Of a stretch of DNA of 64,000 nt, positions 5,496 to 64,000 are shown piece by piece. A program made the translations under genes and the position numbers. The stretch covers positions 156,490 to 220,489 of the IMG/VR virus record IMGVR_UViG_3300049855_000348. One strand, written 5' to 3'. A model generated the notes under the pieces. It had not been told where the DNA came from. It saw nothing but the letters and a program-made list of their open reading frames with translations, and did no database searches. How positions within the stretch are numbered: the stretch's first letter is position 1; each line of letters opens with the position of its first letter.

Positions 5496-5530
5496 CACCT
5501 TCCTCAACACCGGTCATGGCTACATAAGCC

Positions 5531-5707
5531 ATGAACCTCAAGCCCCTCGTCGAAGATACCTGTTCCGGCAACGTGGCTGCATTTACCCGGGCTCGCATTG
5601 GTGGCGGGGATGACAAGGTCGTCCGCAAGCCTGTAGAAAAGAAGAAGGGTACCGGACTCAAGCCCGGTACCCTCTTCGACTTCGTCAACGGCTACAAGAA
5701 ACGCTAG
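5531..5707 (+). CDS. Small basic protein (58 aa), putative internal head protein
   Basis: MNLKPLVEDTCSG...GYKKR; TACATA hexamer 4 nt upstream; below the ORF-track cutoff. Confidence 0.6.
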   Translation: MNLKPLVEDTCSGNVAAFTRARIGGGDDKVVRKPVEKKKGTGLKPGTLFDFVNGYKKR

Positions 5708-7080
5708 CCGGCAAGCTGACCGGTTGCCTTGAGCAATCCGTTCAGCAGATCTTCAGCCGAGGCCGAGGCACCTGCCGGGGGTGGATTGCTGACCGGTGGA
5801 GCCTGCTGGACCGACGATTGAGCCACGACCGGGGGCACAACAGGGTTCGTCGATACCGAGGGCGGTACGGGCATCCCAGCGTCACTGCGGATGGCAGCCT
5901 TGATGTCAGAGACCTTCTCCAGGTCCTCCAACTTGGGCATGCTCACCCGGGTTGATGGCAGGGTAGCAGGAGCCGAGTGCAGGGGCGGCGGCACATGCTG
6001 GTGGCTGGTGGTGGGCTCGGCTGGCTTGAAGACCACAACCGGTTCCTGAGGCTGTGCGGTCGGACCATTGATCGGCACCCCACCCTCCTTGAACAAGCTC
6101 TGCTGGCCTTTGCTGGCGTTCTCCTTGGCGATCACGGCGTCAGACTCGGCGATGAGCGCCTTGTATGCCTTCTCAGCGTCGGTGATGTTCTTGGCCCCGG
6201 TGACGGTCTCGATCTGCTCCGGAGTGAACATGCTACGGCTGTTCAACTCGTCGACCATCTTTTTGAGATCGGCGTCGATCTGTTCCTTGGTGCGACGACC
6301 ACGCTGAACCGTTCCAGAGATCGGCGGCTTGCTGCTACCAACACCAGTCAGGATCTGCTTGGTATCGGTGGTGACACCGGCTGTCTGAGCGGGTGATCCG
6401 AGGCTGGGCGGGGTGGCCGGCTGACCGTTGTTGCTGAAGGGGAGCGATGTCACCTCGTAGATGTCCGGCACTTCAATGTCGATCCAGTCGACCGCATCCA
6501 TCATCATCTCCATCGCCCAGTCGGTCGAATAGAGAGGGAAACTACCAAGCTGACGAGCCGCGATCTCCGCTTCGGCCAGGATGACACCGAACACATAGCG
6601 ATCAGGAACCTGACCAGCACCGCCGATGGTGCCGAGTTTGATGAGACGACCGGCGATATCGGCATCGTAGTCCTTCACCACACGGTTTTTCACGTCGGTG
6701 CCGGAGAGTTCCAGCGTCGCAAAAGTGGCGGTTACCAGACCAAACGAGCAATCCCACTTCACGCGGGCATTGAGTGATGCCATCAGACGCTGTTGGTCAC
6801 TGACCATCAGGCAACCTTTGTCGTTGCCCTCAAGTTTGTTCTTCAGGTACCAACCCCAGACCTCGTTCGAGTTGATGTTCTGGACTCGACTGGTGTTGTC
6901 CAAGCTGATGATGTTCTTCTCAGCATCGAACTTGAAATTCTTGTGGTTGGCCTGGATCGCCTTGAGCAGGTACTTCACCGGCACGCCGATGACACGCGCC
7001 ATCTCGAAGGCGGTGAACTTCGGCAAGACATCCTTGCTGAGCTTGATCGACTCGACGATGGATTCACGAGTGATTTTCAT
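5704..7080 (-). CDS. Hypothetical protein, possible N-terminal HTH and Pro-rich C-terminal tail
   Basis: FTAFEMARVIGVPVKYLLKAI is HTH-like; low-complexity tail. Confidence 0.8.
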   Translation of the reverse strand: MKITRESIVESIKLSKDVLPKFTAFEMARVIGVPVKYLLKAIQANHKNFKFDAEKNIISLDNTSRVQNINSNEVWGWYLKNKLEGNDKGCLMVSDQQRLMASLNARVKWDCSFGLVTATFATLELSGTDVKNRVVKDYDADIAGRLIKLGTIGGAGQVPDRYVFGVILAEAEIAARQLGSFPLYSTDWAMEMMMDAVDWIDIEVPDIYEVTSLPFSNNGQPATPPSLGSPAQTAGVTTDTKQILTGVGSSKPPISGTVQRGRRTKEQIDADLKKMVDELNSRSMFTPEQIETVTGAKNITDAEKAYKALIAESDAVIAKENASKGQQSLFKEGGVPINGPTAQPQEPVVVFKPAEPTTSHQHVPPPLHSAPATLPSTRVSMPKLEDLEKVSDIKAAIRSDAGMPVPPSVSTNPVVPPVVAQSSVQQAPPVSNPPPAGASASAEDLLNGLLKATGQLAG

Positions 7081-7874
7081 GAGTCGGCTCCCTTATGAGC
7101 GAGTTGTTGACCGGTGATGGTGATCGTGCCGGAAGTGGTGACGATGTGGACATAGCCGCTGTCGGCTTCCACCTCGATGTCGAGCACGACACCACCACGA
7201 CACTTGCTGTCTGGTGTGGTATCGAGTCGACCGAAGAGCTTGGAAGAGAGTTCGGTGTGAAGCTGTTGGAAAGGACGTTCCAGACCGTTGGCCTGAATCA
7301 GTGTCTTGGCCGTCGAATAGGTCGCTTCGTTCTGTGCCAGCGCATAGGCAGCTTCCAGCATCGACTGGAGTTTCTTGTGATCGGTGCGCGGCGGCTTGAC
7401 GGTGATATTCACTGGTCTTTGCGGGGCTGCGATGGTTGGAGCCGGAGCACCAGGAGCGACAGCAGGGGCGCTAGTCGCTGGGCGTGTTGGATCTACCGGG
7501 CGCAGATGCTTTCCAGCCGCAAGGGTTGACGGAGCGACCGCAGCCACGGTGACACCAGACTCACTGATGGGTGAACCGAGCGGAATCGGGCCATTCTCTT
7601 CGTGCGGTCGAGGAACAGCACCTCCAGCACCCATGATCTCAGGAACCGAACCTTCTTCACTGTCGAGATTGATCGCCTTTTTCGGATCGAACGACACGCT
7701 CTTGTTCATCTGAGTTGGTGTCTTCTTCTCATTGAGGACAGTGACGATCTCGGTGTCGTTCAGTTGTCCGAACAGAGCGGCGGTCCATCCGAGAGATTTC
7801 ACCTTGTGCCAGATAACACCCTTGGCGATCATGTTCCCTTTGTATGGAATCAGTTCATCGTGATCAAAAGCCAT
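7077..7874 (-). CDS. Hypothetical protein with a Pro/Ala-rich linker
   Basis: Start at MAFDHDEL avoids a long overlap with the resolvase gene. Confidence 0.75.
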   Translation of the reverse strand: MAFDHDELIPYKGNMIAKGVIWHKVKSLGWTAALFGQLNDTEIVTVLNEKKTPTQMNKSVSFDPKKAINLDSEEGSVPEIMGAGGAVPRPHEENGPIPLGSPISESGVTVAAVAPSTLAAGKHLRPVDPTRPATSAPAVAPGAPAPTIAAPQRPVNITVKPPRTDHKKLQSMLEAAYALAQNEATYSTAKTLIQANGLERPFQQLHTELSSKLFGRLDTTPDSKCRGGVVLDIEVEADSGYVHIVTTSGTITITGQQLAHKGADS

Positions 7875-7881
7875 GGTTTCT

Positions 7882-8737: not shown

Positions 8738-9360
8738 CAGACGTGGTTGTAGCCGTCCCCACCGTTATCGACGATGCTCTTGGCAGCAACGTTGATCGAT
8801 GGAGCGGTACCAGACTTCGGCCAGTTGGTGTCGAGATCGCGGTTGGCGATATCGGTTTCGTTGACGATGAACGGACGGATCAGACGTTCAGCCCATCCAC
8901 CGACTTCAACCTGAGCCAAGGTGGCTGACTTGTAGAGGATCATGCGACCTTCGTCGCCGACCTGAGCACCTGCGGACATGATCTTTTCGATCACACCGCC
9001 ACCAACGACAGCGCGGGTCGTGTAGGTGTACTCGGATGACGACTTGAGGAACGTGTAGTCCTGGTTCGGTTTGAGACCACTGTTGGTCGGCACGAAGCCA
9101 GAGCCATGCACCGTCGGGACACGCAGAACTTTTGACGGCACCTCTTTCTGCGCTGTCAGACCCGGCTGAACAACGAAGTTCATGTCCCCGATGGTGAACT
9201 GGAGGACCTGATTCTTCTGGTTGTTCTGCGTCTGGAGTGCAGGGTTCTGATTCACTGCCGTCGAATCAAATGGATAGGTGGCGAGCATGGCGTGTTTCTC
9301 CACGCCTATGTAGCTGGACGCAGCGAAAATCAGAGTCAGGAGGGCCAGGGTCCTGATCAT
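8737..9360 (-). CDS. Hypothetical protein with an N-terminal hydrophobic segment
   Basis: MIRTLALLTLIFAASSYIG; overlaps the upstream stop. Confidence 0.7.
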   Translation of the reverse strand: MIRTLALLTLIFAASSYIGVEKHAMLATYPFDSTAVNQNPALQTQNNQKNQVLQFTIGDMNFVVQPGLTAQKEVPSKVLRVPTVHGSGFVPTNSGLKPNQDYTFLKSSSEYTYTTRAVVGGGVIEKIMSAGAQVGDEGRMILYKSATLAQVEVGGWAERLIRPFIVNETDIANRDLDTNWPKSGTAPSINVAAKSIVDNGGDGYNHV

Positions 9361-12848: not shown

Positions 12849-12854
12849 CATCTC

Positions 12855-12882
12855 ATCCTAGCGACATTTTGGTCTAAGTCAA
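12855..12882 (-). promoter_or_regulatory. Early promoter with operator (Mre11-Rad50 gene)
   Basis: TTGACT-TAGACCAAAATGTCGC-TAGGAT-6 nt-ATG(12848). Confidence 0.8.
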
Positions 12883-20639: not shown

Positions 20640-21400
20640 ATAGCAGTCAAAGGATCGCTAGGATTGACCCATCAAAATTGCCTTACTCAAAACTGCAAGG
20701 GTCAAAAAAAACCCGGCGGAGTAAAATTTATAAAATTTATAAAAGTCATAAATTACTTGACAAAATATAATCTATCTGAGAATTGCCTTTGTCATGTCTT
20801 GCATTGCCAGGGTCCTGCCCTTGGATCAAGGTGGTAACAACTTAGCGCGAAGCGCGATAACTTACACTGACTGAGCTAAGCTAGGCTGTCCTTACAAGGA
20901 GAGTAAGAACAGCAAGACTTACAAGACTTGCAAGTCTTTCGCATTTTTGAAAGACGTGGTAGGGACTGCATAGACATCACTGGGGTATGAGAAGTCGCTA
21001 CGCGAACTGGCATGAACCTATGTTCTTGAGGATGACCACACCTTCATGAGCAAGTCTTCGCGCTTCGCGCTGAGGGTGTCTTGCCCTTGAGCTAAGGGTA
21101 TGAAAGCATCACTGGGATAGCTGGGGTCATGCAAGGCTTGTAAGCCGAGCAAGGCTTTCAAACCACACAGCCTAGCAAGCCACCGGCTTTCCGTTTTCTG
21201 GCCATCTGACGGGCTGTAGGTCGCCCAATGACCATCCAGGGTCAACCTGTCTCAAATCGCCCAGGAACGGCTCGATTGAGTACCCCTGATGAGATACGGA
21301 TTGGTGTGACACGGGTCAATAGAGACACTACCACATCCAGTATCGTGTTGTATTGACAGTTTTTGGGTGATGCCACACTTCGGCCTTCCGGTCTAAGTCA
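20640..21400. other. Long AT-richer non-coding region, putative replication origin
   Basis: Lies between the divergent replication operons; AT tract at 20722-20775; inverted and direct repeats. Confidence 0.5.
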
Positions 21401-21416
21401 ACACCCAGAGGAAGTC

Positions 21417-22034
21417 ATGCAAACGATCTACGACATCGAAACCATTGCCGTTCTCGATGCCAAGTCGATCAACCGTCGTTCCTTCCGATCTGGACCAGCC
21501 TCACGCATCCTTTCAATTTACGATGACCCTGAGATCCTACGGAAGCGACTTGAAGCGAATGTCCCCTGCCCGCTCAAAATGGCGATTGAAAAAAATGGTT
21601 ACGATCCCGCCAATCCTCCGAAGTTGAAGCGCGGTCATTACATGGATCCGAAGGAGTTGTTCTACCGCACCATGAAAGTTCAGATGGCTGGTGGAATCGA
21701 CAAAGCGGGTCGTGATGGAGAACGTTTCATCGAACTGCTGACCCTGCTGGCGAATGGTTATATGGGTCGCATCATGTTCAAGGATACCGGCTCGATGGCC
21801 AATCTCACTGAAGACATGGTGCAAGAAGCTATCACCAAGTGTGCGATGATCGTCATGCGCTTCAATCCCTGGGACCCCCGCGCCACCAAACCCACTCTCA
21901 ATAACGCTTTCGCCTATTTCACCACGGTTATCCGCAATCGCTTCTATGAAACACTCACTTGCCCATTGGTCGGGTCGGATGTGTTCCTCGAAGATCTCAA
22001 AACCGAAAACCAGTCGATCGGTGATTTGATTTGA
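21417..22034 (+). CDS. T4 gp55-like late sigma factor
   Basis: EDMVQEAITKC...RFNP...NAFAYFTTVIRNRF matches the gp55/sigma region 2 pattern. Confidence 0.8.
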   Translation: MQTIYDIETIAVLDAKSINRRSFRSGPASRILSIYDDPEILRKRLEANVPCPLKMAIEKNGYDPANPPKLKRGHYMDPKELFYRTMKVQMAGGIDKAGRDGERFIELLTLLANGYMGRIMFKDTGSMANLTEDMVQEAITKCAMIVMRFNPWDPRATKPTLNNAFAYFTTVIRNRFYETLTCPLVGSDVFLEDLKTENQSIGDLI

Positions 22035-30678: not shown

Positions 30679-30799
30679 AAACACGGTAACGCTGACCAAG
30701 CAGGAGGTTGTGGAGGAGATCGCCGAGGCGTTCTCCGAGATGGACCTCTTCCTCGACAAGACCACCTGGAGCCGCCTGGGAAGGGCTGCTAGCTGGTAA
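30518..30799 (+). CDS. Hypothetical protein
   Basis: W.HP.T...RIY.N pattern. Confidence 0.65.
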   Translation: MAQYSLGKWRHPKTEQIRIYLNGLDSTEQKVWFERGERKNDQLPPEFGIKLCCENTVTLTKQEVVEEIAEAFSEMDLFLDKTTWSRLGRAASW

Positions 30800-30806
30800 C
30801 TAAGTC

Positions 30807-31304
30807 ATGCCGGTCACGCTCCCATCCCCGATCCTCTACAGCGCCCTGACCATGCTTCAGGACACGGATGAGAACGTCATCCTCCAGCGCCTGTACGACC
30901 GTGATGAAGCCCTACTGGCCGCCTTCAACGCCCTCAACGACATCCGTGAAGACCTGATTGCCCAGTTCTCCCGCTTCGACGATATCGAAGCCCGTATCCG
31001 CTCGATCGGCAACATCATCAACGCCATCATCGCAGCGTTCTATCAGGACATCGACGGTAACGGCATCGTTCCGGACAACTACGCCTTCTTCAACCAGTTG
31101 ATCGCCGACCTGAAGTTGAACATCAATGCGATCAACGCCGTCAGTGGTGGCATCATCAACTTCCTTGGTGTTCAGACCGCTGTGACGCCGGTTGCTGAGC
31201 ATCTGGCCCGTCTCCAGGGGCTCGACAATCTGATCAAGGAAAAGTTGAACTACATCTACAGCAAGTGGGACATCGATCCGAACGACGATCTACTCTCGCT
31301 GTGA
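30807..31304 (+). CDS. Putative structural coiled-coil protein
   Basis: Late hexamer TAACTA 4 nt upstream. Confidence 0.7.
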   Translation: MPVTLPSPILYSALTMLQDTDENVILQRLYDRDEALLAAFNALNDIREDLIAQFSRFDDIEARIRSIGNIINAIIAAFYQDIDGNGIVPDNYAFFNQLIADLKLNINAINAVSGGIINFLGVQTAVTPVAEHLARLQGLDNLIKEKLNYIYSKWDIDPNDDLLSL

Positions 31305-38596: not shown

Positions 38597-38932
38597 TCAG
38601 GCCGAAGCAGCAGGCTCCGGGCACTTGAGACCACCGAACGGGAAGATCATGTCTTGGAAGTCAAATCGCTTCGTCTCCACCACACCCATCAACGGGATCT
38701 TGTAGACCACCGCATAACGATCGTTCGTCACGATGTCATCGTAGGTCAAATCAACGACCAGCTTCGCACGATCGACGAAGCGATCATAGGGGCCATACTC
38801 ACGAAGCCGGTTGCTGGTGTAGCGCCAATACCGCAGGAACGACAGACAGCCACCGTTCGGCGTAGGACGGCAAAGGACCTTCGCTTCGGGCGTCGGAGCC
38901 TCTGGGGCTGGGAAGATCGGAAACAGGGCCAT
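38597..38932 (-). CDS. Putative late/structural small protein
   Basis: MALFPIFPAPE...; TATCTA 5 nt upstream. Confidence 0.6.
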   Translation of the reverse strand: MALFPIFPAPEAPTPEAKVLCRPTPNGGCLSFLRYWRYTSNRLREYGPYDRFVDRAKLVVDLTYDDIVTNDRYAVVYKIPLMGVVETKRFDFQDMIFPFGGLKCPEPAASA

Positions 38933-38967
38933 GTGTATAGATAGTTTCAGAGCATCCAAGGATACCC

Positions 38968-40557
38968 ATGATTGAGAAAATCGGTCGTTCTGGCGTCGAA
39001 CTCCACCAAGTCCGCAAGCACGTGGATGCCGATGGAAACGACATCGGACCACGTCGGAAGCCCAACAACGCCTATCTGGACGGCAAGGTGAAGACCCGTG
39101 GCGGACGGGCTCCCCAGGGCTGCACCCGCATGGTCAGCCACGGCTTCGGACCCAGCAAGCTCAACGTCAACAACGACGTGCCCAAATTGTCGAAGCAGCA
39201 GAGGACTCTGCTGCTGGCGATCGATGCAGGAGCCACCACGCTGACGACCGCTGCCTTGAAGGTGGCCGACTCCCTGGTCAAGCTGGACCTTGTGATCTGG
39301 AGCGATTCCAAGAACAACTTCGTCTGTATGGTCGAAGGTCGTCGCGTCGCTGAACTCCTGAGGGAAAACAAAAAGTGAGTGCGAGCCACGCCAAACGCAA
39401 AGTCTCACGCTTAGACTTCGAGAAGATGTTCCCAGAATACGACACTGATTTCTGGGAAGGCATTCTGTTGTTCGACGACATGAACGAGGCTTTCGTTGGA
39501 ATTGCCCAGCAGTTCACCAACGAAACGGTTGCGGTCTACGACTACGATCTCTGCCTCAAGTGCCTCATGAAGAGTGGCATGTCTGAGGAAGATGCCCTCG
39601 AATGGTTTGTGACAAACACCCAGGGTTCGTGGATCGGTGAGCGTACGCCGATGATCCTCTACCAACGTGGCGACAAGAAGAAAAAATGAAAACCACTGAA
39701 CTCATCCTGTGCAAGACAGTCACCACTGAGTCCTTCCCTGATCGTGGGTGGATCGGCCTCGTCATTCCCGGCGAGAACGGCAAAGAGTTGGCCGGTCTCT
39801 ACACCCGCTCGGAACTGTACCGGGAGGTGAAGAAGATCATGGACAAGTACGGCGAGGACAAGGTCCGCATGACCGTCTCGAAGTTCAAGGTCCCTGAGGG
39901 CTACCAACTGATGTTCGCTCCGAGCCGTGATGCCTATGATGGCACGCACGCTCGCAAGCTCATCGAGAAGCACCTGTATGGGTGAATCGTGACGCATCAC
40001 GATCATCGAAAGAACCTCAGAGATCTTTCTCGTGATGACCCAATGCTGACCCTGATCGAGCAGCCGTCGGCTATACAGGCCGACGGCTCTGTGCAGATAG
40101 GGGATGGGCTAGTTCAATCCCAACCTGCTGACCTTACATACAATACCGACAAATTCGGCAACGCCATAAAGGCTGCTGTGTTCGTCGCTGAGGTGGAGAA
40201 CACACAACCAGCATTGCCAGCCGAACCAGGACCAGTCCGGCTCGCAGTAAATCGCACTCATCTGAAAGGTCTCCTGTGCCTGCCCGAGTCATCCCTATCA
40301 CCAGACGAATCTGGAATCGAAAAAAGCTCATAGAACGAATGACTCTGACCAAGCGCGACGACAAGGACGGCATCGTCATCGATGTCAGTCCCGGGGCAGT
40401 GAACTCCATACTCATTGTTGAGACCATGGTGCTGCTGGAGCAATGCCAGAAGGACAAGGTCTCAGTCGAGATCCACACCCACGACGATACCACCTATCGT
40501 TCGTTCAAATACGTGGGTATGGAGAAACTGGCCGTCCTGAAGCGGATGCCGAACTAA
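38968..40557 (+). other. Small hypothetical ORFs (38968-39378, 39375-39689, 39686-39985, 39989-40333, ~40339-40557)
   Basis: Coupled ORFs; 39375-39689 has the common phage pattern AVYDY....MS.E.A.EW..N..G. Confidence 0.65.
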
Positions 40558-40565
40558 CTAGGTGC

Positions 40566-40892
40566 ATGCCGCTGAGCAAAGCTCAGATCCAGATTCTGAC
40601 CAACCCTGCTGTGCGTAAGCGGTTACCCGCCAGGGCGTCAGACTTCAAGTACGCCGACACCCTGCTCAGGGATGTGGGAGAGGGATGTCCTCGACTTCCA
40701 GCAGTCTGGACCAGGGTCTTCTCCAATCTCAGCCCAGCGGATGCTGCGTGGCTGAACCAGACCTTTCCCGGCCATCAATTCGCAGGTGTCGACCCCAAGG
40801 CACCACCACAGCCTTTGCCGCCGTTGGTGAAGCCGTCGAATATCGTTCACCGTGCGATTGAAGTCCTCCAGTCGTACAAGAAAGCCACATGA
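40566..40892 (+). CDS. Putative late protein
   Basis: MPLSKAQIQ...; TAACTA 5 nt upstream. Confidence 0.65.
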   Translation: MPLSKAQIQILTNPAVRKRLPARASDFKYADTLLRDVGEGCPRLPAVWTRVFSNLSPADAAWLNQTFPGHQFAGVDPKAPPQPLPPLVKPSNIVHRAIEVLQSYKKAT

Positions 40893-47229: not shown

Positions 47230-48107
47230 CAGAACTCGCCGAAGAGGTCATCGACTGACTCGGCCAGCGTCTCACGCTTGGCGACCGAACCAGCACTGCG
47301 GATGAGGTTGATGACCTTCTCGGCCCGGTCACCCACCTGCAAGCGCCACGCCGTGCGCTGGAGGCTGTTGGCTGCCCTGGGATAGTCGAAGCGTTCCAAG
47401 TGATCCCGGGCATCCAGGTTGGCGAAGCCGGTCGGCCCGAGGTTGTAGATCAGGTCGGTCACCGCCAACTGGACCTCCTTGGGTTGCTCCTCGAAGGTCT
47501 TCATGACCCGAGGACCAGCCTTCAGGGCATCGGCGACCTTGGCGGCGAACAGAGCCTCGATCTCTTGGTCGGTCAGACGGCGTTGGCCGGTTTTGACGGC
47601 GGTGTAGTTGATGCCCAGGTCGCGCAGGTACCGAGCCGCACCGGGCTGATCCAGGTTGAAACCGACACCAATGGTCCGCTTACCGACCGAGTCTCGGTAG
47701 ACCTTCGCCCGGCGACCCTCGTTGGGGTGGATGAACTCCTTGGCCTCTTCCAGGCTCAGGGATTCCCTTTGGAAGGCCGTATCTGGCCCGGGGGGTGTCT
47801 CGGTAGGGGGCGGCGGGTAAGATGGCTGTGTGGGCTTCTGGTGCGTCGCAGTGGCCGGTTCCTTGGCTTCCACCGGTGGCTGGTAGCTCTCCTTGTTGCC
47901 GAGAGCCTTGGCCGCCAGCAGGCCGAGGAGGACGCCAGTGCTCGCCATGGCGGCACGCTTGGTCCACGGAAGATCGGCCTCGGACACCATAGGAGCGAAT
48001 AGGCTATCGACTGATTGGCTGAGTCCAACCGATTCCTTGACGATTCGGCGGGGTGGCCGGCGCACCTCCGTTTGATGAATCCACAGCGGTTGTGCTTTCG
48101 CAGTCAT
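47229..48107 (-). CDS. GH24 (T4-lysozyme family) muramidase with N-terminal extension
   Basis: E-X8-D-X5-T triad EGRRAKVYRDSVGKRTIGVG; YNLG; W..QVGDRA; start at ATG 48107. Confidence 0.88.
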   Translation of the reverse strand: MTAKAQPLWIHQTEVRRPPRRIVKESVGLSQSVDSLFAPMVSEADLPWTKRAAMASTGVLLGLLAAKALGNKESYQPPVEAKEPATATHQKPTQPSYPPPPTETPPGPDTAFQRESLSLEEAKEFIHPNEGRRAKVYRDSVGKRTIGVGFNLDQPGAARYLRDLGINYTAVKTGQRRLTDQEIEALFAAKVADALKAGPRVMKTFEEQPKEVQLAVTDLIYNLGPTGFANLDARDHLERFDYPRAANSLQRTAWRLQVGDRAEKVINLIRSAGSVAKRETLAESVDDLFGEF

Positions 48108-48112
48108 GCATC

Positions 48113-48118
48113 TATCTA
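48113..48118. promoter_or_regulatory. Bidirectional putative late promoter hexamer TATCTA/TAGATA
   Basis: 4 nt from ATG 48123 (+) and 5 nt from ATG 48107 (-). Confidence 0.55.
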
Positions 48119-48122
48119 AGTC

Positions 48123-49820
48123 ATGCACCGCGTTGATCTGACCGACCTTGCCAGGATCTCTGAAGCTCACTACTCGGATGTCTTCGGTGCAGCGATGCGG
48201 CGGTTCCACGACAAGTACAAGGACGCCGGTCCCGAGTTCTTCGTGAATTTCAACCCGGTGGTCAGCGATCCCCGGGACAAGACCATCCTTGGCCAGCAGA
48301 GCGATATCCCGGCACCCAAGAGCGGGCCGGACGCTGGGCACCCCCTGTTCAAGAAACCCGACCACAGCGACCCGGTGGGCACCTACGTCTACCCTGCTGA
48401 GTACGTCGCCAACCACTGGCATGACCTCCAGTACGGGTCAGACATGGGCAACCTGCGGGTGCTCAAGGTCAACACCGATCCCGAACACACACTGATCCTC
48501 AGCGACATGACGCAGGATCAGTTCCTTGAGGCAATGAAACGCCTCAACCTGGAATTCCATGTCCGTGATCACGGCTGGATCTACACCCGGTCGAAGCGTG
48601 ATGCGATTGCGATCTATGAAGCGATCTTCGAGTGGGAGGCACCGTCGGCACCCCATCACCGGGTGAACTCCTACGGCAAGGTGCTCTTCAAGCTCATCCA
48701 GAACGACTACCGCTTCGAGCCCAACGTGCCCGAGGAGGATGAGGATGCCGATGAGGAGGAGGGCGAGAACTGGAATGCATTCATGGAAACTGGGTTGTCG
48801 AAAGACAGCAAATACTCCTCAGCCGGTGAGTTCAAATACGAAGGTCAATTGAAGGTCCAGCACGTCACTGAACTGACGCAGATCAAGCAGACTCGTCGTC
48901 TGTTGAAGGCCAAGTATGAAGTGGTCATCGACCGGGCCAAGACTCCGCTGGAGGCTACGATCTACCCGTCCGAGCCAGAGCAAGCCGTCTGCCTGACCAA
49001 GCGGTCCTACGAGGTGGTCGACACCTACAAGATTCAGAACGCTGCTCAGGGTGACCAGACCGTCAGACCAGAACGTCTCGACCGTGAGAAGCTGACCAAG
49101 AAGGCTGGGTGGTTGATCGCCAAGACCATGGGTGAGTCGATCACCGAGAACGTCAGCCATTTCTTCAACCGCGAAGGAGTCAACCAGCCCGGTCGAATCA
49201 GGAATCTCCACATCCTGCGGAACTGGATCTCCACCGAACGTGTTGAGCAGCACCCCATCTCGTCATGGGATCCCACTGGTCAGATGACGGCTATCGATGC
49301 CTGGGTAACCACCAAGGGCAACCTGATTGTGGTCGATACAGTTGTCGCCAGGGCCGAGACCGTCGCCGATCCACAGGCCAAAGCACGCACTCATCAGTCA
49401 GTCTCAAAGGCTCGCATCCGTCCCGGTGAGGATCAGCAGGCGATCACTGACAACCTCACCAGCTATGTCGACTCGGCGATGGACAAGTCTGAGCATCGCA
49501 AGTTCGGCGCTCACAACACCATCTCTTTTGCGATCGGTCTGGTCACCGCTGCGGCACAACCAACGTTCATCAGAACCAGGGCGAAAGAGAGCCTGTCAGA
49601 TCTGCCGGCGAAGGTTCAGGAGGCGTTGCACAAGAACAGCGCCACTGCACCCTTCAAGCGGATCACCAACGCTCTGTTGGAAGAGTTCGTGAAAGCAGCC
49701 AAGAAGAAGGTCGCTTTGGTCAAACCACACGCAGATTCAGCAGCGAGTACATCCGCTGGAAATCCTCCGACAGCCACACCAGCGGCACCGGGTGATACTT
49801 CGGCGCATCCAACACCATAA
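48123..49820 (+). CDS. Putative virion-packaged protein with an ART-like domain (paralogue B)
   Basis: KPDHSDPVGTYVYP...NLRVLKV...VVID.AK....I.Y.SEPEQA; N-terminal RISE. Confidence 0.7.
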   Translation: MHRVDLTDLARISEAHYSDVFGAAMRRFHDKYKDAGPEFFVNFNPVVSDPRDKTILGQQSDIPAPKSGPDAGHPLFKKPDHSDPVGTYVYPAEYVANHWHDLQYGSDMGNLRVLKVNTDPEHTLILSDMTQDQFLEAMKRLNLEFHVRDHGWIYTRSKRDAIAIYEAIFEWEAPSAPHHRVNSYGKVLFKLIQNDYRFEPNVPEEDEDADEEEGENWNAFMETGLSKDSKYSSAGEFKYEGQLKVQHVTELTQIKQTRRLLKAKYEVVIDRAKTPLEATIYPSEPEQAVCLTKRSYEVVDTYKIQNAAQGDQTVRPERLDREKLTKKAGWLIAKTMGESITENVSHFFNREGVNQPGRIRNLHILRNWISTERVEQHPISSWDPTGQMTAIDAWVTTKGNLIVVDTVVARAETVADPQAKARTHQSVSKARIRPGEDQQAITDNLTSYVDSAMDKSEHRKFGAHNTISFAIGLVTAAAQPTFIRTRAKESLSDLPAKVQEALHKNSATAPFKRITNALLEEFVKAAKKKVALVKPHADSAASTSAGNPPTATPAAPGDTSAHPTP

Positions 49821-52817: not shown

Positions 52818-52845
52818 AGTATAGCGACCTTTTGGTCGCTGTCAA
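52818..52845 (-). promoter_or_regulatory. Early promoter with perfect operator
   Basis: TTGACA-GCGACCAAAAGGTCGC-TATACT. Confidence 0.88.
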
Positions 52846-54148: not shown

Positions 54149-54176
54149 AGTATAGCGACCTTTTTGTCTAAGTCAA
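54149..54176 (-). promoter_or_regulatory. Early promoter with operator
   Basis: TTGACT-TAGACAAAAAGGTCGC-TATACT. Confidence 0.85.
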
Positions 54177-56447: not shown

Positions 56448-56475
56448 AGTATAGCGACCAATTTATCTAAGTCAA
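56448..56475 (-). promoter_or_regulatory. Early promoter with operator
   Basis: TTGACT-TAGATAAATTGGTCGC-TATACT-6 nt-ATG. Confidence 0.85.
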
Positions 56476-56478
56476 CAC

Positions 56479-58000
56479 CTACTTGGTCTCTTCGCGTTCC
56501 TTGGCAGCGGTGGCGATTTTTCCCATTTCACGCTGAACGGTTTGCAAGTTGTTCCCGTGGTGGGCTACTATCGCCATCGCGGTGGTATCTTCCCGCACAT
56601 AGTGACCAGCCAGACGAAGGTGCTCCTGAGCCGCTGCGATGTGACGCTGAGCGTCGCGGTACTCACGAGAGGTTAGTTGGTGGGCCATGGTGTTCTTTTC
56701 ATGTGAGAAGTTTCATTTCCCGCAAGGCGTTCTGAGCCGTGGTGTGCATCTCGAAACGAAGATCTGGATTTCCACGAACACGTTCAGATCGATGGTTGGA
56801 GATAGATCTCAGGGCTGCGATGGCGGTCTGTAGTTGCTTGGCCATGTCTTCGATGTCGATGAACTTCACGTAGCTGCCGTCGTTCATCGGTTCGAGATCA
56901 TAGCGTGGACCACCTTCGCAGTCGCCGACTCCGTAGCGTTGGAGAGCCATGAATTATTCCAGTTCGATCCAAATCGAGACATTCACTTCTGGCGTACCGC
57001 CAACGAGGTCGTTGTGATATTTTAGGACGTGTTCGTGTTCGACCTTACGGACGATGCCGTAGACCGGCCCTCTTTCTTCATGGTAACAAATGTGCTCGTC
57101 GATTTTCGGAATCGAGGCACCGGCTGGCCATGTGAGCATGGTCAGGATATCAGAGTCGTTTGGATTTTCCTTTTTGTAATGGTAGATGGCGATGGATTGA
57201 TTGCTGAGCATTGGTTCTTTCCTTACGAATGCTTACAAATTATCTACATACGACTGAAGCGCGTTGTCTCTCTGCTCTGCGGTGTCATATGGGCCATGCT
57301 TGTTGCACCACACTTCATCCCAGAACCAGAACTTGCCATCCTCTTTGAATCGAGGATCTGAGGAATCACCCTTTGCCTTCTTGGTCTCTTCGGCGTTGCG
57401 GTATTCCTTGAGTCCCTTCTCAGCCGCAGCACAGCGCATGCTGATGGCATTGATGCCATTGGTCAGATCACCACCGAAGGGACCGTTGGGATCTCCGAAG
57501 CCGCCGAGGGCTTGTCTGGCGCTGTCGATCTGTGCTCGCATACATTTGACGCAGCAGCCACAGGGGCCATCACCGTCTTCCATGCAGCCGACACCACGGA
57601 GCATGTCGATCTCTGCCTGTTTTTGCTCGTTGCCATGCCTGAGTTTTTGCAATTCTTCCTTGGTGAAGGCATTGACCTTGAGCAGGAAGAAATCAGGTAG
57701 GCCGGTGTCGACGTTGGGGACATCTGGATAACCAACGACCTTGGCGAAGTTGACCAACATGCACTTGCCCTGATAGAACAGTTCGTCGTACGCCTTCTCG
57801 GCGTCGGTGACCTGGGTGAAGTCATGCTCGTTGGCGACCATGAACATGGAGATCTTTTCGAGGAGTTTGAAGTCCTTCGCTCGTCCGATCTCCCCCATGC
57901 ATTCACGCAGTAGCTCGGATCCAGCCTTGATGCGTCCGAGCAGATGTCGGCTGTATTCTTGAAGTTTGGCGATCTCGTCAGCCTGTGTGGATTCTGTCAT
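56479..58000 (-). other. Hypothetical ORFs (56479-56688, 56699-56950, 56954-57211, 57233-58000)
   Basis: Tightly packed minus-strand ORFs. Confidence 0.65.
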
Positions 58001-58007
58001 GGGCTCC

Positions 58008-58035
58008 TAATTAGCGACCTTTTAGGTGCTATCAA
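58008..58035 (-). promoter_or_regulatory. Degenerate early promoter/operator
   Basis: TTGATA-GCACCTAAAAGGTCGC-TAATTA. Confidence 0.55.
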
Positions 58036-58038
58036 TCG

Positions 58039-59450: not shown

Positions 59451-59456
59451 GCCCGA

Positions 59457-59484
59457 AGTATAGCGACCATTTTGTCGCTGTCAA
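59457..59484 (-). promoter_or_regulatory. Early promoter with operator
   Basis: TTGACA-GCGACAAAATGGTCGC-TATACT-6 nt-ATG. Confidence 0.88.
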
Positions 59485-59530
59485 CAACTGGTTGGTGGTA
59501 TTCGTCTGGTAGCCCCGATATACATAGAAC

Positions 59531-60949
59531 ATGCTCCTGATCGACATCGCTGACAGCACTCTTCCAAGTCACCTCCTGTTGGCACAGGCAGTTATGGAAG
59601 CCGTTGGCAAGGCAAAAGAGATGCCGATGGGCTGGAAGCATGTCTCCAAGTACCTGACCGAAGAAGAGAAAGGGAAGATGCGGAAGGACACCGCACAGAA
59701 GTTGATCAACATCTTCCGTTCCCTGCCCAACGAGAAGGAGTTCGAGGCATCAGCCCGTGCCGGCCAAGCCAAGAAGGGCTGGTACGCAGCCTCCGCCCAG
59801 GCTCTGATGGAAGTCTTCGGACCTGACACCCCTCGCTTTGCCGCCTTGCTGGCCAGCCTCTCCCCTCAGGTGTCGGTGCAGGAGAACCTGCGCAATGCCA
59901 TCCGTTTCTGGGAGAAGTGGATCGAAGCTGGTCGCCCAACCCATGGCAAGGAACTCGACGCTGTTGGCCATGCAGCAGTCGGCCAGCCACGCTGGGAGAA
60001 GATGAACTGGAAGCAGAACGTTCAGCGTTCGATGTTGCACGAAAGCCCCGAGAAGGTTGTCCTGTCTTCGGGTGGCATGGCTGGCAAGGTCGACAGCTTC
60101 CGTGCCAATCTCCTGGGAGATCTCAGCCGCGTCACCAACGACGCCTGGATGGCCCACTTCGCCAACATCGATCAGGCTCTCTTCTCCAGCCCCGCTGGCT
60201 ACCTCGCCATGACTGCCCGCGTCCGCAAGGTCGCTGCCAAGATGGGCTGGTCACCGGCTGAGGTGCAGGAGACCGTGTGGAGCTTCTTCAAGGCTCTGCA
60301 CGAGAAACAGAATCAACAACATCAGGGTCGCAAAACGCTGGAGAAGCTGGGTCATGACGACGTGAACTCGTCTGAAGATTTCGCTGATCTGCTGGTCCGC
60401 GACGAAGAGGTGAAAAATGCACTCAAAAGACTCCGGGATCGAGGGCTCGTTGGAGAACCTACTCCGCGCTCTAGAGACGGAGGGCAAGATCCAGGATCAA
60501 GCCCACAATCCGCAGCAGCGCAAAGAGGTCTTGCTGGCAGTCTTGGGCGGGTCGCCGACCGAGCAGAAGCCCTCAAGCACCGACAAGACCTCCAAGAACT
60601 CGCCACCCGTGGCTACCACTTCCCCAACGCCACCAACATCAAGTACGGGCACCACCACGTTACCTTCACGCTAGTCGATCCACGTGAGATCGCCGAGTGG
60701 AAGGAAAAGATGCGCAAGCCGGAGGACACCTACTCGCTGATCCTTGGTCGCAAGGATGGCAAGTGGGATCGTTTGTCTGGTGTCACGCATGGCATGCCGA
60801 CGGTGACCGACAACGGTACCGATGTCACCATCACCCTGCCATTCGCTGAACGTGAGAAGATCAAGCCAGCAGCGATTGATGCCGAGCGTTGGCGCTACGT
60901 TGATGCGAAGAAAATGGAACGTGCCAAGAAGTTGAACAAGGCAGTTTAG
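59531..60949 (+). CDS. Putative DNA-glycosylase-fold (DUF7178-like) protein, late-expressed
   Basis: GWY...AALLASLSPQ.SV..N...KVDSFRANL.GD..RVTNDAWM...Y...PAEVQETVW; family assignment from memory. Confidence 0.55.
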   Translation: MLLIDIADSTLPSHLLLAQAVMEAVGKAKEMPMGWKHVSKYLTEEEKGKMRKDTAQKLINIFRSLPNEKEFEASARAGQAKKGWYAASAQALMEVFGPDTPRFAALLASLSPQVSVQENLRNAIRFWEKWIEAGRPTHGKELDAVGHAAVGQPRWEKMNWKQNVQRSMLHESPEKVVLSSGGMAGKVDSFRANLLGDLSRVTNDAWMAHFANIDQALFSSPAGYLAMTARVRKVAAKMGWSPAEVQETVWSFFKALHEKQNQQHQGRKTLEKLGHDDVNSSEDFADLLVRDEEVKNALKRLRDRGLVGEPTPRSRDGGQDPGSSPQSAAAQRGLAGSLGRVADRAEALKHRQDLQELATRGYHFPNATNIKYGHHHVTFTLVDPREIAEWKEKMRKPEDTYSLILGRKDGKWDRLSGVTHGMPTVTDNGTDVTITLPFAEREKIKPAAIDAERWRYVDAKKMERAKKLNKAV

Positions 60950-60951
60950 TG

Positions 60952-60979
60952 TTGACTTAGACCAAATGGTCGCTATAAT
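60952..60979 (+). promoter_or_regulatory. Early promoter with operator
   Basis: TTGACT-TAGACCAAATGGTCGC-TATAAT-6 nt-ATG. Confidence 0.88.
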
Positions 60980-60985
60980 GTGGGC

Positions 60986-62390: not shown

Positions 62391-63247
62391 GAGGGCTTCC
62401 GGATGCGAAGGATGTAATTGCCGAGGGAGGAGAACGGGGTCAGATCGAGACCGCTGGTGGCGATACGATAGACGACAACCTGCGGCACACCAGAGAGCAT
62501 GAAGAACGTCGCCTTGTAGGCGGTGGTCGGCAGTTCAACACCATTCTCCAGCAGCGAGATCTCGCCACCGGATTCCTGGAAGTCTGACCAGTCATACTGA
62601 GTGGTCAGTGGGAACACCTGATGGTCGATGTCGTTCAGAGCACCGAAGGAGAAATTGATCCGGATGTTGAGCGGATCCTGTTCGAGGTTGACCGCACGCA
62701 GTGTGGAGGCGGCATAGCCGGTCTCATTCTGCATCGGGCCGGTGTAATAAACATTTTCGTTACCAACCAAAGTCTCCCAGGTCTTGCCGAGGAGAACTCC
62801 GTCGTTGGCGACGATGACCGGATCATTGATGAGAGGGTCATTCCAGAACGTGGCGGCGAACTGGCTGGGCACCTTGGTGTTCAGGAAATACAGGCGCTGA
62901 ACCGGGCCGGCGACCTGAGTCCAGTCGTGGTTGCCGCTCGGGATGAGGACGCTGTTCTGCACACGGACATCGATGTTGATGGCTGCACCGTTGGTGCCGA
63001 TGGCGCGGATGCTGGCGAAGACGGTCAGGTCGGGACCTGCGGCGACACCCTTGTAGGCTTTCGAGCCACGTTCCTTGATGACCTTGAGCAACTTGTTGGT
63101 CGAGTCATACCAGGGCATGCCGGCGACGGCGTAGCCCGGCAGGGAGGCTCCGGCTTGGCTGCTCAGCAGGGAGTTGAAGTTGTCCCGGACAAGCTGGGAA
63201 ACCGCCAAAGAGTTGAATGCCGGTTGTGTCGGGGTGAAGGACTGCAT
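62387..63247 (-). CDS. Putative tail fibre/structural protein
   Basis: NFNSLLS..AG...P....G.PWYDST..LLKV motif; TAGATA 5 nt upstream. Confidence 0.65.
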   Translation of the reverse strand: MQSFTPTQPAFNSLAVSQLVRDNFNSLLSSQAGASLPGYAVAGMPWYDSTNKLLKVIKERGSKAYKGVAAGPDLTVFASIRAIGTNGAAINIDVRVQNSVLIPSGNHDWTQVAGPVQRLYFLNTKVPSQFAATFWNDPLINDPVIVANDGVLLGKTWETLVGNENVYYTGPMQNETGYAASTLRAVNLEQDPLNIRINFSFGALNDIDHQVFPLTTQYDWSDFQESGGEISLLENGVELPTTAYKATFFMLSGVPQVVVYRIATSGLDLTPFSSLGNYILRIRKPS

Positions 63248-63279
63248 GGGCTTATCTAGCGGGTCCGACGCTTCTTAGG

Positions 63280-63687
63280 TCAGTAGAACAGGACGCGCAT
63301 CGAGCCATCAGGTTCCAGTACGGTGGAGATGCCTCGGAATACGAACATTTCACGCTGGGTCAGGGCGACCAATTCAGCCCATGCCTCGTTGGTGTTTGGG
63401 ATGTTCATCACCTTGCCAGCGACCGACTTGGGTGTGGTCACCGAGACCTTCTCACCCATCAGAAAACCAGCGATCTCGTTGATGCCCTTGCTGTCCTTCA
63501 GCAGGGCGTTCTGGATCTCCATGGCGCACTTGCAGTTGGGGTTGTCCTGGTAGCTGTTGATGTTCGCTTCCTGATTGGGGAAGCGTTCGAGGAACCTCCG
63601 GCGACGGGCGACCTCTTCAGGTGTTGGTGCGGCAGCATTCTGATACCGCAGAGCCTGGGTCAGTTGTTGAACGGTAAGTGCTAGCAT
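63280..63687 (-). CDS. Hypothetical protein
   Basis: 135-aa ORF; NPNCKC. Confidence 0.7.
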   Translation of the reverse strand: MLALTVQQLTQALRYQNAAAPTPEEVARRRRFLERFPNQEANINSYQDNPNCKCAMEIQNALLKDSKGINEIAGFLMGEKVSVTTPKSVAGKVMNIPNTNEAWAELVALTQREMFVFRGISTVLEPDGSMRVLFY

Positions 63688-63758
63688 GGTGACCTATAGA
63701 TGGAGCGAAACGTCTTCAGAGACGGTCGAAATCTAACTTCTAGACGCTACATAACCAA

Positions 63759-64000
63759 GTGAGACCAGATCCTTTCATCGATATCGTATGTGGATTTTCT
63801 AAAATCCAGTTGTGTCTCGGTTCTTCGGGTCCGTCATCATCCAGTCTTTTTTCTTCAAGCTCTTCTTCGTCCTCAAGCTCAAGCTCGTCAAGCTCAAGCT
63901 CGTCAAGCTCAAGCTCGTCAAGCTCAAGCTCGTCAAGCTCAAGCTCGTCAAGCTCAAGCTCGTCAAGCTCAAGCTCGTCAAGCTCAAGCTCGTCAAGCTC
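63759..64000 (+). CDS. Cys-motif + poly-Ser protein (5' part; runs off the window)
   Basis: TACATA-5 nt-GTG; MRPDPFIDIVCGFSKIQLCLGSSGPSSSSLFSSSSS... Confidence 0.65.
   Translation, partial: MRPDPFIDIVCGFSKIQLCLGSSGPSSSSLFSSSSSSSSSSSSSSSSSSSSSSSSSSSSSSSSSSSSSSSSSSSSSSSSS
63872..64000 (+). repeat. 15-bp tandem repeat (TCAAGCTCAAGCTCG)n, more than 8 units, encoding poly-Ser
   Basis: Read directly from the sequence. Confidence 0.95.

What the first reader, a model, noticed from the sequence alone, without database searches (positions are those of the whole stretch)
5521..63761. Second tier: divergent gp55-type late promoter TA-N-[A/C]-TA directly ahead of start codons
Seen: TACATA-4-ATG (5531, 59531), TAACTA-4/5-ATG (30807, 40566), TATCTA-4/5-ATG (48123; 38932 minus), TAGATA-5-ATG (48107, 63247 minus) and TACATA-5-GTG (63759). 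TA-rich hexamers are uncommon in this GC-rich coding DNA. These genes have no -35 or SD and are structural-type. Established: T4 gp55 recognises only a -10 TATAAATA. Inference: the gp55-like sigma at 21417 reads a relaxed TANMTA core and makes leaderless late mRNAs.
Basis: partly seen in the sequence, partly recalled or inferred. Interest (0 to 1): 0.75.

Follow-up and report, generated by a model that had tools for sequence, protein, structure and literature searches.

The report
Late promoter fused to start codons
An uncultivated 220-kb freshwater phage carries a conserved 10-12-base signal (consensus gcTAGATAAGcc) directly against the start codons of its virion and lysis genes; it is most likely a one-element late promoter read by the phage's T4-gp55-like sigma factor, giving mRNAs with no leader.

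Summary
All nine cited sites exist. TANMTA hexamers are not rare (window 21 vs 22 expected). Their coupling to a start codon 4-5 nt downstream is enriched: 9 vs 1.6 in the window, 32 vs 6.8 genome-wide, and 27 vs 2.9 for the tighter form.

The real element is gcTAGATAAGcc.

The element has two layouts. Its first T lies 10-11 nt before ATG/GTG with no SD (about 28 sites), or it lies 20-47 nt upstream of an SD (about 12 sites). Genes behind it include terminase, tail sheath, the gene before the portal, a tape-measure-like protein and a lysozyme. No -35 is conserved.

TAGATA is absent from gene interiors on both strands. ORF w21417-22034 is a gp55-type sigma by profile (20 of 21 family members) and by fold (Z 10.1, 1.9 Å to T4 gp55). 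No phage RNA polymerase was detected.

Two cited sites are weak. The GTG at 63759 opens no coding ORF, and 40566 is ambiguous. No transcript 5' ends could be obtained, so both the leaderless start and the sigma-motif link remain inferences.

Verdict: a real feature, a new variant of the T4-type late promoter.

The parts
5521..5533 (+). Motif ggcTACATAAGcc-ATG, leaderless-type; gene w5531-5707 (58 aa)
   Evidence: PWM score 22.4. Coding score +10.8. Divergent from an early promoter 69 nt away.
21417..22034 (+). gp55-like late sigma factor (205 aa), the only one in the genome
   Evidence: phrog_234 E 3.7e-6, matched by 20 of 21 family members. Single genomic hit. Model superposes on 7d7c_F at Z 10.1, rmsd 1.9 Å. 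No Pfam family.
30797..30809 (+). Motif tggTAACTAAGtc-ATG, leaderless-type; gene w30807-31304 (165 aa). Its first TAA is the stop codon of w30518-30799.
   Evidence: PWM score 17.8. Upstream gene ends 7 nt before the ATG.
38938..38945 (+). TAGATAGT, leadered-type, 30 nt before the ATG of w38968-39378, with an AAGGA SD
38930..38943 (-). TATCTATAcac-ATG on the minus strand, the mirror of the previous site; gene w38597-38932 (111 aa). A weak variant with T at motif position 7.
   Evidence: The minus-strand ORF scores +10.7 and the overlapping plus-strand ORF -29.
40555..40568 (+). TAACTAGGtgc-ATG; ORF w40566-40892 of doubtful coding status. Its TAA is the stop codon of w40339-40557.
   Evidence: Coding score -5.2.
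48113..48125 (+). TATCTAAGtc-ATG, leaderless-type; gene w48123-49820 (565 aa). One half of a bidirectional pair in a 15-nt intergenic gap.
   Evidence: The stretch TCTATCTAAGTCATGCACCG is invariant in the window and three relatives, while the upstream flank does not align between them.
48105..48118 (-). TAGATAGAtgc-ATG, leaderless-type; lysozyme-domain gene w47229-48107 (292 aa), followed by w44896-47229
   Evidence: Phage_lysozyme and phrog_7 matches. The ORF extension upstream of this ATG scores -13. Orthologues carry TAGATAGatgcATG (L024) and TAGATAAgtcATG (L025).
57239..57246 (-).
59521..59533 (+). ataTACATAGaac-ATG, a weak leaderless-type variant; DUF7178 gene w59531-60949 (472 aa)
   Evidence: The DUF7178 genes in relatives carry cgcTAGATAAgcccATG (L026) and TAGATATGTCC-ATG (L025).
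63245..63258 (-). cgcTAGATAAGccc-ATG, leaderless-type; gene w62387-63247 (286 aa), followed by w61767-62390 and w61186-61767
   Evidence: PWM score 18.0.
63748..63761 (+). TACATAAccaa-GTG: the motif is present, but the GTG opens no coding ORF. Not supported as a gene start.
   Evidence: Coding score -52.4. It runs into the 15-nt tandem repeat at w63873-64000.

Best explanation
The motif is the late promoter of this phage. It is a single -10-like element, consensus g-c-T-A-G-A-T-A-A-G/A-c-c, with no -35 partner.

In about 28 cases its first T lies 10 nt (less often 11 nt) before the A of an ATG/GTG, with no room for a ribosome-binding site. Transcription would then start at or within a base or two of the start codon, and the mRNA would be leaderless. 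Each such gene therefore carries its own promoter, including promoters that overlap the last codons of the upstream gene and palindromic back-to-back pairs in 15-35-nt divergent gaps. In about 12 cases the same element lies 20-47 nt upstream of a gene that has a GAGG-type SD.

The reader of the motif is most likely host RNA polymerase core carrying the phage's only sigma-like protein, the gp55-type protein at w21417-22034.

Shown: the motif, its position, its conservation, the gene classes behind it, and the gp55-like nature of the protein.
Inferred: that it acts as a promoter, that transcripts start at the ATG, and that this sigma reads it.

On geometry, TAGATA matches the last six bases of T4's TATAAATA (TAAATA) at 5 of 6 positions. 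In T4 those bases lie at -11..-6. Here they would lie at -10..-5 (or -11..-6 in the 11-nt class) if the A of ATG is +1, which is the T4 spacing to within one base.
For: 1. Position. The motif-to-start coupling is 5-9 times the shuffle expectation. There is a sharp peak at -10/-11 relative to starts chosen by coding potential alone. 29 of 30 motif+ATG/GTG sites open an ORF of 49 aa or more.
2. Distribution. TAGATA occurs 21 times in 220 kb on both strands, and 18 have a gene start 6-45 nt downstream on the same strand.
3. Conservation. In relatives with independent gene calls (54-65% GC; 46-64% identity in the capsid-like protein), 17 of 85 genes carry the motif at -10/-11 and 12 more carry it within 60 nt upstream. 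These account for nearly every occurrence in those loci. In further relatives it recurs at the w48123, lysozyme and DUF7178 genes. In the alignments TAGATAA-A-n-C-A and TCTATCTAAGTCATGCACCG are invariant while the flanks diverge.
4. One class. Variants interchange at orthologous sites: TAGATAAgcc, TACATAGgtc and TAGATAGgtc at one gene; TAGCTAA, TACCTAA and TAACTAA at another.
5. Gene class. The motif precedes the terminase large subunit, the tail sheath, the 71-aa gene before the T4-like portal, a tape-measure-like protein, a lysozyme and a 3994-aa giant protein. The SbcC-like nuclease and the helicase operon sit behind sigma70-type early promoters instead.
6. Single element. No position from -45 to -3 is conserved.
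7. Acts on DNA. In 161 kb of gene interiors TAGATA occurs 0 times on the sense strand (3.3 expected) and 0 times on the antisense strand (17.3-17.7 expected from synonymous shuffles). That is the largest expectation among same-composition hexamers with a zero count.
8. Stop-codon overlap is not the general cause. Only 6 of 28 leaderless-type sites have a co-directional gene ending within 12 nt, and 9 are in divergent gaps.
9. New transcription unit. A GC-rich hairpin lies just upstream of the promoter of gene 5774-6520. It is kept as a structure with different sequence in three relatives.
10. Internal calibration. 19 early promoters place the ATG exactly 6 nt after a TATACT -10, the canonical +1. 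The phage therefore uses leaderless mRNAs routinely.
11. Sigma. The invariant NAFAYFT stretch matches T4 gp55 N93-P-H-A-Y97-I-T99 after a one-residue manual shift of the alignment. Y97 and T99 are gp55 pocket residues for flipped promoter bases (PMC7892883).
12. No rival polymerase. Rpb1 and Rpb2 family searches found nothing while their controls worked. None of the large proteins scanned showed a polymerase match.
Against: - No transcript 5' end was observed. The one RNA run held only five contigs of 151-244 nt on the 6-kb test stretch.
- If TAGATAAG is aligned in register with T4's TATAAATA (-13..-6; PMC7892883), the start would fall after the ATG. The model needs the shifted alignment or a shorter spacing than T4.
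- The sequence link of the sigma to gp55 is weak outside the PHROG profile: hhalign E 0.21, no PDB hit by profile, Foldseek E above 0.3.
- No gp45-type clamp was found, and gp33 was not sought.
- TA-containing hexamers are generally depleted in these genes (most at 0.1-0.6 of the synonymous-shuffle expectation), so part of the avoidance signal is compositional.
- Several large proteins have no annotation, so a very divergent polymerase cannot be excluded. The control for the single-subunit family PF00940 did not work.
Confidence: 0.58

Rival explanations
1. The motif is a promoter, but not for the gp55-like sigma. An undetected phage-encoded RNA polymerase or specificity factor would recognise an initiator-type element and start at the conserved purine at motif position 8 (TAGATAA-R). 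That would give a 2-3-nt leader in the close layout. Precedents are T7-type or mitochondrial nonanucleotide promoters, and the phiKZ (TATG) and AR9 (AACA-N6-TA/G) late promoters, which end at the start site.
For: Position 8 is a purine in 39 of the 40 curated sites (PWM). The conserved block abuts the start codon more closely than sigma70 or in-register T4 geometry allows. In three leadered promoters (sheath, tube-like, 629-aa gene) the SD begins 11-12 nt after the first T, so a T4-spaced start would cut into it. Several proteins of 600-1300 aa have no family match. Motifs that end at the start site are known in jumbo phages (PMC5312081).
Against: Rpb1 and Rpb2 families are absent from the genome while their controls worked. 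No polymerase match appeared in any large protein scanned. The 1289-aa protein's nearest Atlas clusters are virion-type DUF4815, a lead only. A gp55-type sigma is present, and it would otherwise have no promoter class to serve. The early genes use plain sigma70 promoters, so the phage depends on host polymerase.
Confidence: 0.2
2. The motif acts in RNA rather than DNA. It would be an SD-independent translation start or re-initiation signal (stop codons TAG/TAA just before the ATG), or a cleavage site that trims polycistronic late RNA down to leaderless mRNAs.
For: The motif contains TAG and TAA. In 6 of 28 close sites it overlaps or abuts the stop codon of a co-directional upstream gene. The distance to the ATG is fixed, and there is no SD.
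Against: 22 of 28 close sites have no upstream gene ending within 12 nt, and 9 are in divergent gaps as short as 15 nt. The same motif occurs at variable distance upstream of ordinary SDs. The motif is avoided on the antisense strand of genes, which an RNA signal would not require. A hairpin precedes some sites, as at the end of a transcription unit.
Confidence: 0.1
3. There is no function. The pattern would be a by-product of composition: stop-rich, AT-rich intergenic DNA next to start codons in a GC-rich genome.
For: The overall TANMTA count equals the dinucleotide expectation. Stop-containing words are confined to intergenic DNA by coding constraint.
Against: The register is exact at -10/-11. 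Orientation is always toward the gene. There is base-by-base conservation in diverged relatives with different GC content. The flanking g-c and c-c positions are also conserved.
Confidence: 0.03

Closest known systems
Bacteriophage T4 late transcription (gp55 sigma, TATAAATA late promoter, gp33 and gp45 co-activators)
   Same: A small sigma with only a region-2-like domain. A promoter made of one -10-like element with no -35. Use in front of virion and lysis genes. TAGATA equals T4's TAAATA at 5 of 6 positions. The spacing to the proposed start is within 1 nt of T4's (8-mer at -13..-6, derived from PMC7892883; promoter description in PMC2988020). A T4-like portal and gp23-like major head protein are present.
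   Different: The consensus is gcTAGATAAG, not TATAAATA. G/C replaces the T-13/A-12 pair, although A-12 is the base T4 gp55 buries in its deep pocket. Most copies abut a start codon with no SD, whereas T4 late mRNAs have leaders (from my own knowledge). No gp45-type clamp was found. The replicase is a DnaE-type Pol III alpha. The sigma has about 70 extra N-terminal residues and a different conserved C-terminal tail.
-10 element adjacent to the ORF giving leaderless mRNA (Deinococcus-Thermus: PMC12340547; mycobacteria: PMC4633059, by title only; Thermus phage phiYS40 middle/late genes: Sevostyanova et al. 2007, recalled from memory, paper not held)
   Same: A promoter -10 element a few bases upstream of the start codon, no SD, and the start codon at the mRNA 5' end. 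This phage's early promoters follow that layout exactly, with TATACT, 6 nt, then ATG.
   Different: The late element is not a housekeeping TANNNT -10. It lies 2 nt closer to the ATG than the early -10 does, has no -35, and is presumably read by a phage sigma.
Late promoters of phiKZ-like jumbo phages (phiKZ TATG, AR9 AACA-N6-TA/G; PMC5312081)
   Same: A short conserved motif lying directly at the transcription start, in a jumbo phage with many late genes each carrying its own copy.
   Different: Those motifs are read by phage multisubunit RNA polymerases, and none is detectable here. AR9 leaders are 26-491 nt long (PMC5312081).

Membership tests
T4 gp55-type late sigma factor | Profile match to the gp55 family | tested here: met
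   phrog_234 E 3.7e-6 over residues 112-179. 20 of 21 homologues match it and 3 also match phrog_12791. Genome search E 2.8e-7, a single locus.
T4 gp55-type late sigma factor | Sigma region-2-like fold, no region 4, too diverged for the Pfam sigma70 models | tested here: met
   Model pLDDT 71. 7d7c_F gp55 Z 10.1, rmsd 1.9 Å over 92 residues; the other matches at Z above 8 are sigma-factor chains or RNA polymerase-sigma models. No Pfam family. Sigma70_r2 is absent from the genome. Caveat: Foldseek E-values are all above 0.3, and Z near 10 is not decisive for helical folds.
T4 gp55-type late sigma factor | Pocket residues that hold flipped promoter bases (gp55 L54, R57, F86, H95, Y97, T99; PMC7892883) | tested here: inconclusive
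   hhalign aligns residues 108-178 to gp55 47-108 at E 0.21. After a one-residue manual shift, the invariant N163-A-F-A-Y167-F-T169 matches gp55 N93-P-H-A-Y97-I-T99. R118 aligns with R57. H95 is replaced by F.
T4 gp55-type late sigma factor | C-terminal sliding-clamp-binding tail, with gp45 and gp33 partners | tested here: inconclusive
   The family has a near-invariant acidic-hydrophobic extreme C-terminus, YLEDLKTENQS(I/V)GDLI, where T4 gp55 has SLDFLYEAND. No gp45-type clamp was found. There is only a sub-threshold DnaN-like hit. gp33 was not searched.
T4-type late promoter | A single -10-like element with no conserved -35 | tested here: met
   Across the 40 curated sites taken together, information content exceeds 0.4 bit only from the first T onward; nothing from -45 to -3 is conserved.
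T4-type late promoter | Consensus TATAAATA | tested here: not met
   The consensus is gcTAGATAAGcc. TATAAA-type words are not the enriched ones.
T4-type late promoter | Element at -13..-6 relative to a mapped transcription start | not testable with these tools
   No 5' ends were obtained. If the A of ATG is +1, TAGATA lies at -10..-5 or -11..-6.
T4-type late promoter | Lies ahead of late (virion, packaging, lysis) genes | tested here: met
   Terminase, sheath, the gene before the portal, a tape-measure-like protein and a lysozyme. Timing of expression itself was not measured.
Leaderless mRNA from an ORF-adjacent -10 element | -10-like element a few bases before the start codon, with no SD | tested here: met
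   The first T lies at -10 (23 sites) or -11 (5 sites) among the 28 curated close sites, with a peak at -10/-11 against independently called starts. The 4-5 bases between the hexamer and the ATG are AGCC-like.
Leaderless mRNA from an ORF-adjacent -10 element | mRNA 5' end at the start codon | not testable with these tools
   The RNA run X4 held only five short contigs.
Promoter of a phage-encoded RNA polymerase (T7-type, or phiKZ/AR9 non-virion type) | The genome encodes such a polymerase | tested here: not met
   Rpb2_6 and Rpb1_2 are absent while their controls worked. No polymerase family appeared in the large proteins scanned. The PF00940 search was uninformative because its control did not work.

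The most novel reading that the evidence does not exclude
A gp55-family sigma has shifted its specificity from TATAAATA to gcTAGATAAG and works with the promoter pressed against the start codon. Promoter and start codon then form one portable cassette of about 13 bases. Nearly every late gene would be its own leaderless transcription unit, including palindromic two-way promoters in 15-nt gaps. Together with the leaderless early genes, the phage would run most of its programme without Shine-Dalgarno pairing. That could make it insensitive to, or let it profit from, changes in host ribosome specificity.
Probability: 0.4. Interest if true: 0.7.

Novelty: new variant of a known kind. Interest (0 to 1): 0.55.

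Why it matters
It gives a testable second specificity for the poorly sampled gp55 branch of sigma factors. The predicted promoter sequence, a candidate base-pocket motif (NAFAYFT against gp55's NPHAYIT) and natural variants are all in hand.

It points to a clade of uncultivated jumbo phages, seen so far only in metagenomes (the source is freshwater sediment), in which both early and late genes are largely leaderless. This bears on how phages control translation, on the host (likely a lineage that translates leaderless mRNA well), and on annotation. Gene callers that expect an SD will misplace starts in these genomes, whereas the motif marks them to the base.

The 13-base promoter-plus-start cassette could also serve as a compact expression part if it works with the sigma in a laboratory host.

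Tried and rejected
- Relatives among cultured phages: none by DNA or protein. IMG/VR: none besides the genome's own record. JGI contigs with a single protein: none. With the sigma alignment: three short loci only.
There is therefore no start-site evidence either way.
- PDB search with the sigma profile found only chance hits. hhalign to T4 gp55 was weak.
- The terminator/promoter consensus scan found the one early promoter but no useful terminators.
- Rfam found nothing in the window.
Three relatives had no DNA on file.
- The locus around a distant sigma homologue (L031) holds replication genes only, so it could not test whether sigma and motif vary together.
- Rejected: stop-codon overlap or translational coupling as the general cause.
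- Rejected: the ATG being part of the promoter rather than a start codon, because 29 of 30 sites open an ORF of 49 aa or more.
- Rejected: the plus-strand ORF w38591-38944 as the real gene at the 38932 site (score -29).

Full report
**Setting.** The window is bases 156,490-220,489 of a single 220,489-bp virus record, 56% GC. It is classed as complete with direct terminal repeats, and its source is a freshwater sediment metagenome. It has no relatives among cultured phages or in IMG/VR. It encodes a T4-like portal, a gp23-like major head protein, a tail sheath, a baseplate wedge protein, a large terminase, a DnaE-type polymerase and about 33 tRNAs. It is therefore an uncultivated jumbo myovirus distantly tied to the T4 superfamily.

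**The observation.**
- The hexamers themselves are no rarer than dinucleotide content predicts: 21 vs 22 in the window and 97 vs 93 in the genome.
- Their coupling to ATG/GTG 4-5 nt downstream is enriched: 9 vs 1.6 in the window, 32 vs 6.8 genome-wide, and 27 vs 2.9 for the tighter form.
- I called 230 genes by coding potential alone. Relative to those starts the motif's first T peaks at -10 (14 sites) and -11 (3 sites), is scattered from -20 to -86, and is nearly absent downstream.
- 29 of 30 motif+start sites open an ORF of 49 aa or more.

**What the motif really is.** Unbiased hexamer enrichment upstream of starts gave two signals of equal strength, TATACT and TAGATA, each 42-fold enriched.
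- TATACT belongs to about 35 near-identical sigma70-type early promoters (TTGACttagac...GTCGCTATACT). In 19 of them the ATG lies exactly 6 nt after the -10 hexamer, at the canonical +1. Leaderless mRNAs are therefore routine in this phage.
- TAGATA occurs 21 times in the genome, 18 of them 6-45 nt ahead of a start on the same strand.
- An iterated weight matrix gives g-c-T-A-G-A-T-A-A-G-c-c followed by ATG. No position further upstream carries information, so there is no -35.

**Two layouts.**
- About 28 sites have the first T 10 or 11 nt before the start codon and no SD.
- About 12 sites have the same element 20-47 nt upstream of a gene with a GAGG-type SD, among them the sheath, the tube-like gene, the capsid-like 347-aa gene and two head-region genes.
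- Only 6 of the 28 close sites abut the stop codon of a co-directional gene, and 9 lie in divergent gaps. Two gaps are 15 nt (w48107/w48123) and 34 nt (genome 91413/91448). There the two motifs overlap as a near-palindrome, CTTAGATAAG read on one strand and CTTATCTAAG on the other. This explains the TATCTA variant.

**Conservation.**
- Homologues of the capsid-like protein and of w48123-49820 led to nine metagenomic loci of 54-65% GC, with gene calls made independently of mine.
- In the six loci around the capsid-like gene, 17 of 85 genes carry the motif at -10/-11 and 12 more carry it within 60 nt. That accounts for almost every occurrence in those loci.
- In the three loci around w48123 the motif recurs at the w48123 orthologue, the lysozyme gene and the DUF7178 gene.
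- Orthologous starts keep the motif while swapping variants.
- In alignments the motif is an island of identity. TAGATAA-A-n-C-A is invariant ahead of the capsid-like gene in six genomes (one carries a 1-nt insertion in the motif). TCTATCTAAGTCATGCACCG is invariant ahead of w48123 in four.
- In the leadered capsid-like promoter the invariant C-A falls exactly where the close layout has C-ATG. This suggests one common start position, 10 nt after the first T.

**DNA-level action.**
- In 161 kb of gene interiors TAGATA is absent from both strands. The expectation is 3.3 on the sense strand and about 17.5 on the antisense strand from synonymous-codon shuffles.
- Among 60 same-composition hexamers this is the largest expectation with a zero count. 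TA-containing words are depleted in general, so part of the effect is compositional.
- A GC-rich hairpin sits immediately upstream of one close-layout promoter. It is kept as a structure, not as sequence, in three relatives.
- These features fit a promoter better than an RNA signal.

**Gene class.** The motif precedes the large terminase, the sheath, the small gene before the portal, a tape-measure-like protein, the lysozyme-domain gene, a 3994-aa protein and many unknowns. The SbcC-like nuclease and a helicase operon are behind early promoters. Timing was not measured.

**The sigma.**
- ORF w21417-22034 has no Pfam match. It matches the gp55 family phrog_234, as do 20 of its 21 homologues. 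It is the only such gene in the genome.
- Its AlphaFold model (pLDDT 71) aligns to T4 gp55 in the late open complex at Z 10.1 and 1.9 Å. The other nine matches at Z above 8 are sigma-factor chains or RNA polymerase-sigma models. Foldseek E-values are weak, the PDB profile search is empty and hhalign gives E 0.21.
- The invariant NAFAYFT stretch matches gp55 NPHAYIT, which holds pocket residues Y97 and T99 (PMC7892883).
- No multisubunit RNA polymerase is detectable. No Sigma70_r2 domain and no gp45-type clamp were found.

**Geometry.** In T4 P23 the flipped bases A-12, A-9 and A-8 place TATAAATA at -13..-6 (PMC7892883).
- Aligned in register, the motif here would put the start after the ATG, which cannot be right.
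- Aligned as TAGATA to TAAATA (5 of 6 identical), it puts the start at the A of the ATG in the 11-nt class and one base earlier in the 10-nt class, at a pyrimidine-purine step. That is the T4 spacing to within one base.
- The conserved g-c would then replace T4's T-13/A-12. This would be a real change of specificity, and it is untested.

**Individual sites.**
- w5521, w30797, w48113, w48118(-), w59521 and w63258(-) are well supported. The sites at w48113, w48118 and w59521 are also backed by orthologues.
- w38943(-) is a weak variant mirrored by a better plus-strand TAGATAG that serves w38968. The minus-strand gene itself is real.
- w40555 precedes an ORF of uncertain coding status.
- w63748 precedes no gene.

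**Verdict.** This is a real, conserved, positionally exact regulatory element. It is best read as a gp55-type late promoter with a new consensus, fused to start codons to make leaderless late mRNAs. The promoter nature is well supported (about 0.8). The leaderless start and the assignment to this sigma are inferences awaiting 5'-end mapping or reconstitution.

Noticed in passing
whole genome (window included): The tetranucleotide TTAA does not occur once in 220,489 bases, against 72 expected from an order-2 Markov model. CTAG and CGCG are at 0.38 of expectation. This suggests escape from a TTAA-cutting host restriction system.
   Followed up: partly
window 5082-5109(-), 5468-5495(-), 12855-12882(-), 35421-35448(+), 52818-52845(-), 54149-54176(-), 56448-56475(-), 58008-58035(-), 59457-59484(-), 60952-60979(+); about 25 more elsewhere: About 35 near-identical sigma70-type promoters, TTGACttagac-N5-6-GTCGCTATACT. 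In 19 of them the ATG lies exactly 6 nt after the -10 hexamer, so early mRNAs are leaderless. The rest have 21-33-nt leaders with an SD. The invariant spacer (GAC...GTCGC) looks like an operator.
   Followed up: partly
window 20640-21416: A non-coding stretch of about 750 nt upstream of the sigma gene. It has an AT-rich part (20700-20790) and AAGACTT/AAGTCTT repeats (20890-20945). The repeats recur upstream of sigma homologues in L031 (about 9650-9700) and L030. There is no Rfam match. It could be an origin, an iteron array or a regulatory region.
   Followed up: partly
window 63873-64000 and genome 1-128: The 'direct terminal repeat' of the record is 8.5 copies of a 15-nt unit, TCAAGCTCAAGCTCG. 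It may be an assembly overlap within a tandem array rather than a true terminal redundancy.
   Followed up: partly
genome 18491-23006 (+) and 39879-40769 (-), outside the window (L001-L004): Two tRNA arrays totalling about 33 genes and covering most amino acids.
   Followed up: no
genome 5722-5763 (L001); L016 about 9180-9215; L017 about 9180-9215; L021 about 5985-6020: A GC-rich hairpin without a T-run lies immediately upstream of a close-layout late promoter. It is conserved as a structure with different sequence in three relatives. It may be a terminator or an RNA 3'-end stabiliser.
   Followed up: partly
window 21981-22031 (C-terminus of the sigma): The extreme C-terminal tail YLEDLKTENQS(I/V)GDLI is near-invariant across 21 homologues down to 41% identity. 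T4 gp55 ends in its clamp-binding SLDFLYEAND, so this may be a partner-binding peptide.
   Followed up: no
genome 102690-102740 (-), outside the window (L010/L011): One TAGATAG copy forms the loop of a perfect terminator-like hairpin (cccgctggc / gccagcggg followed by TTTTTT) between the tube-like gene and the 1249-aa gene. It may be both terminator and promoter, or a coincidence.
   Followed up: no
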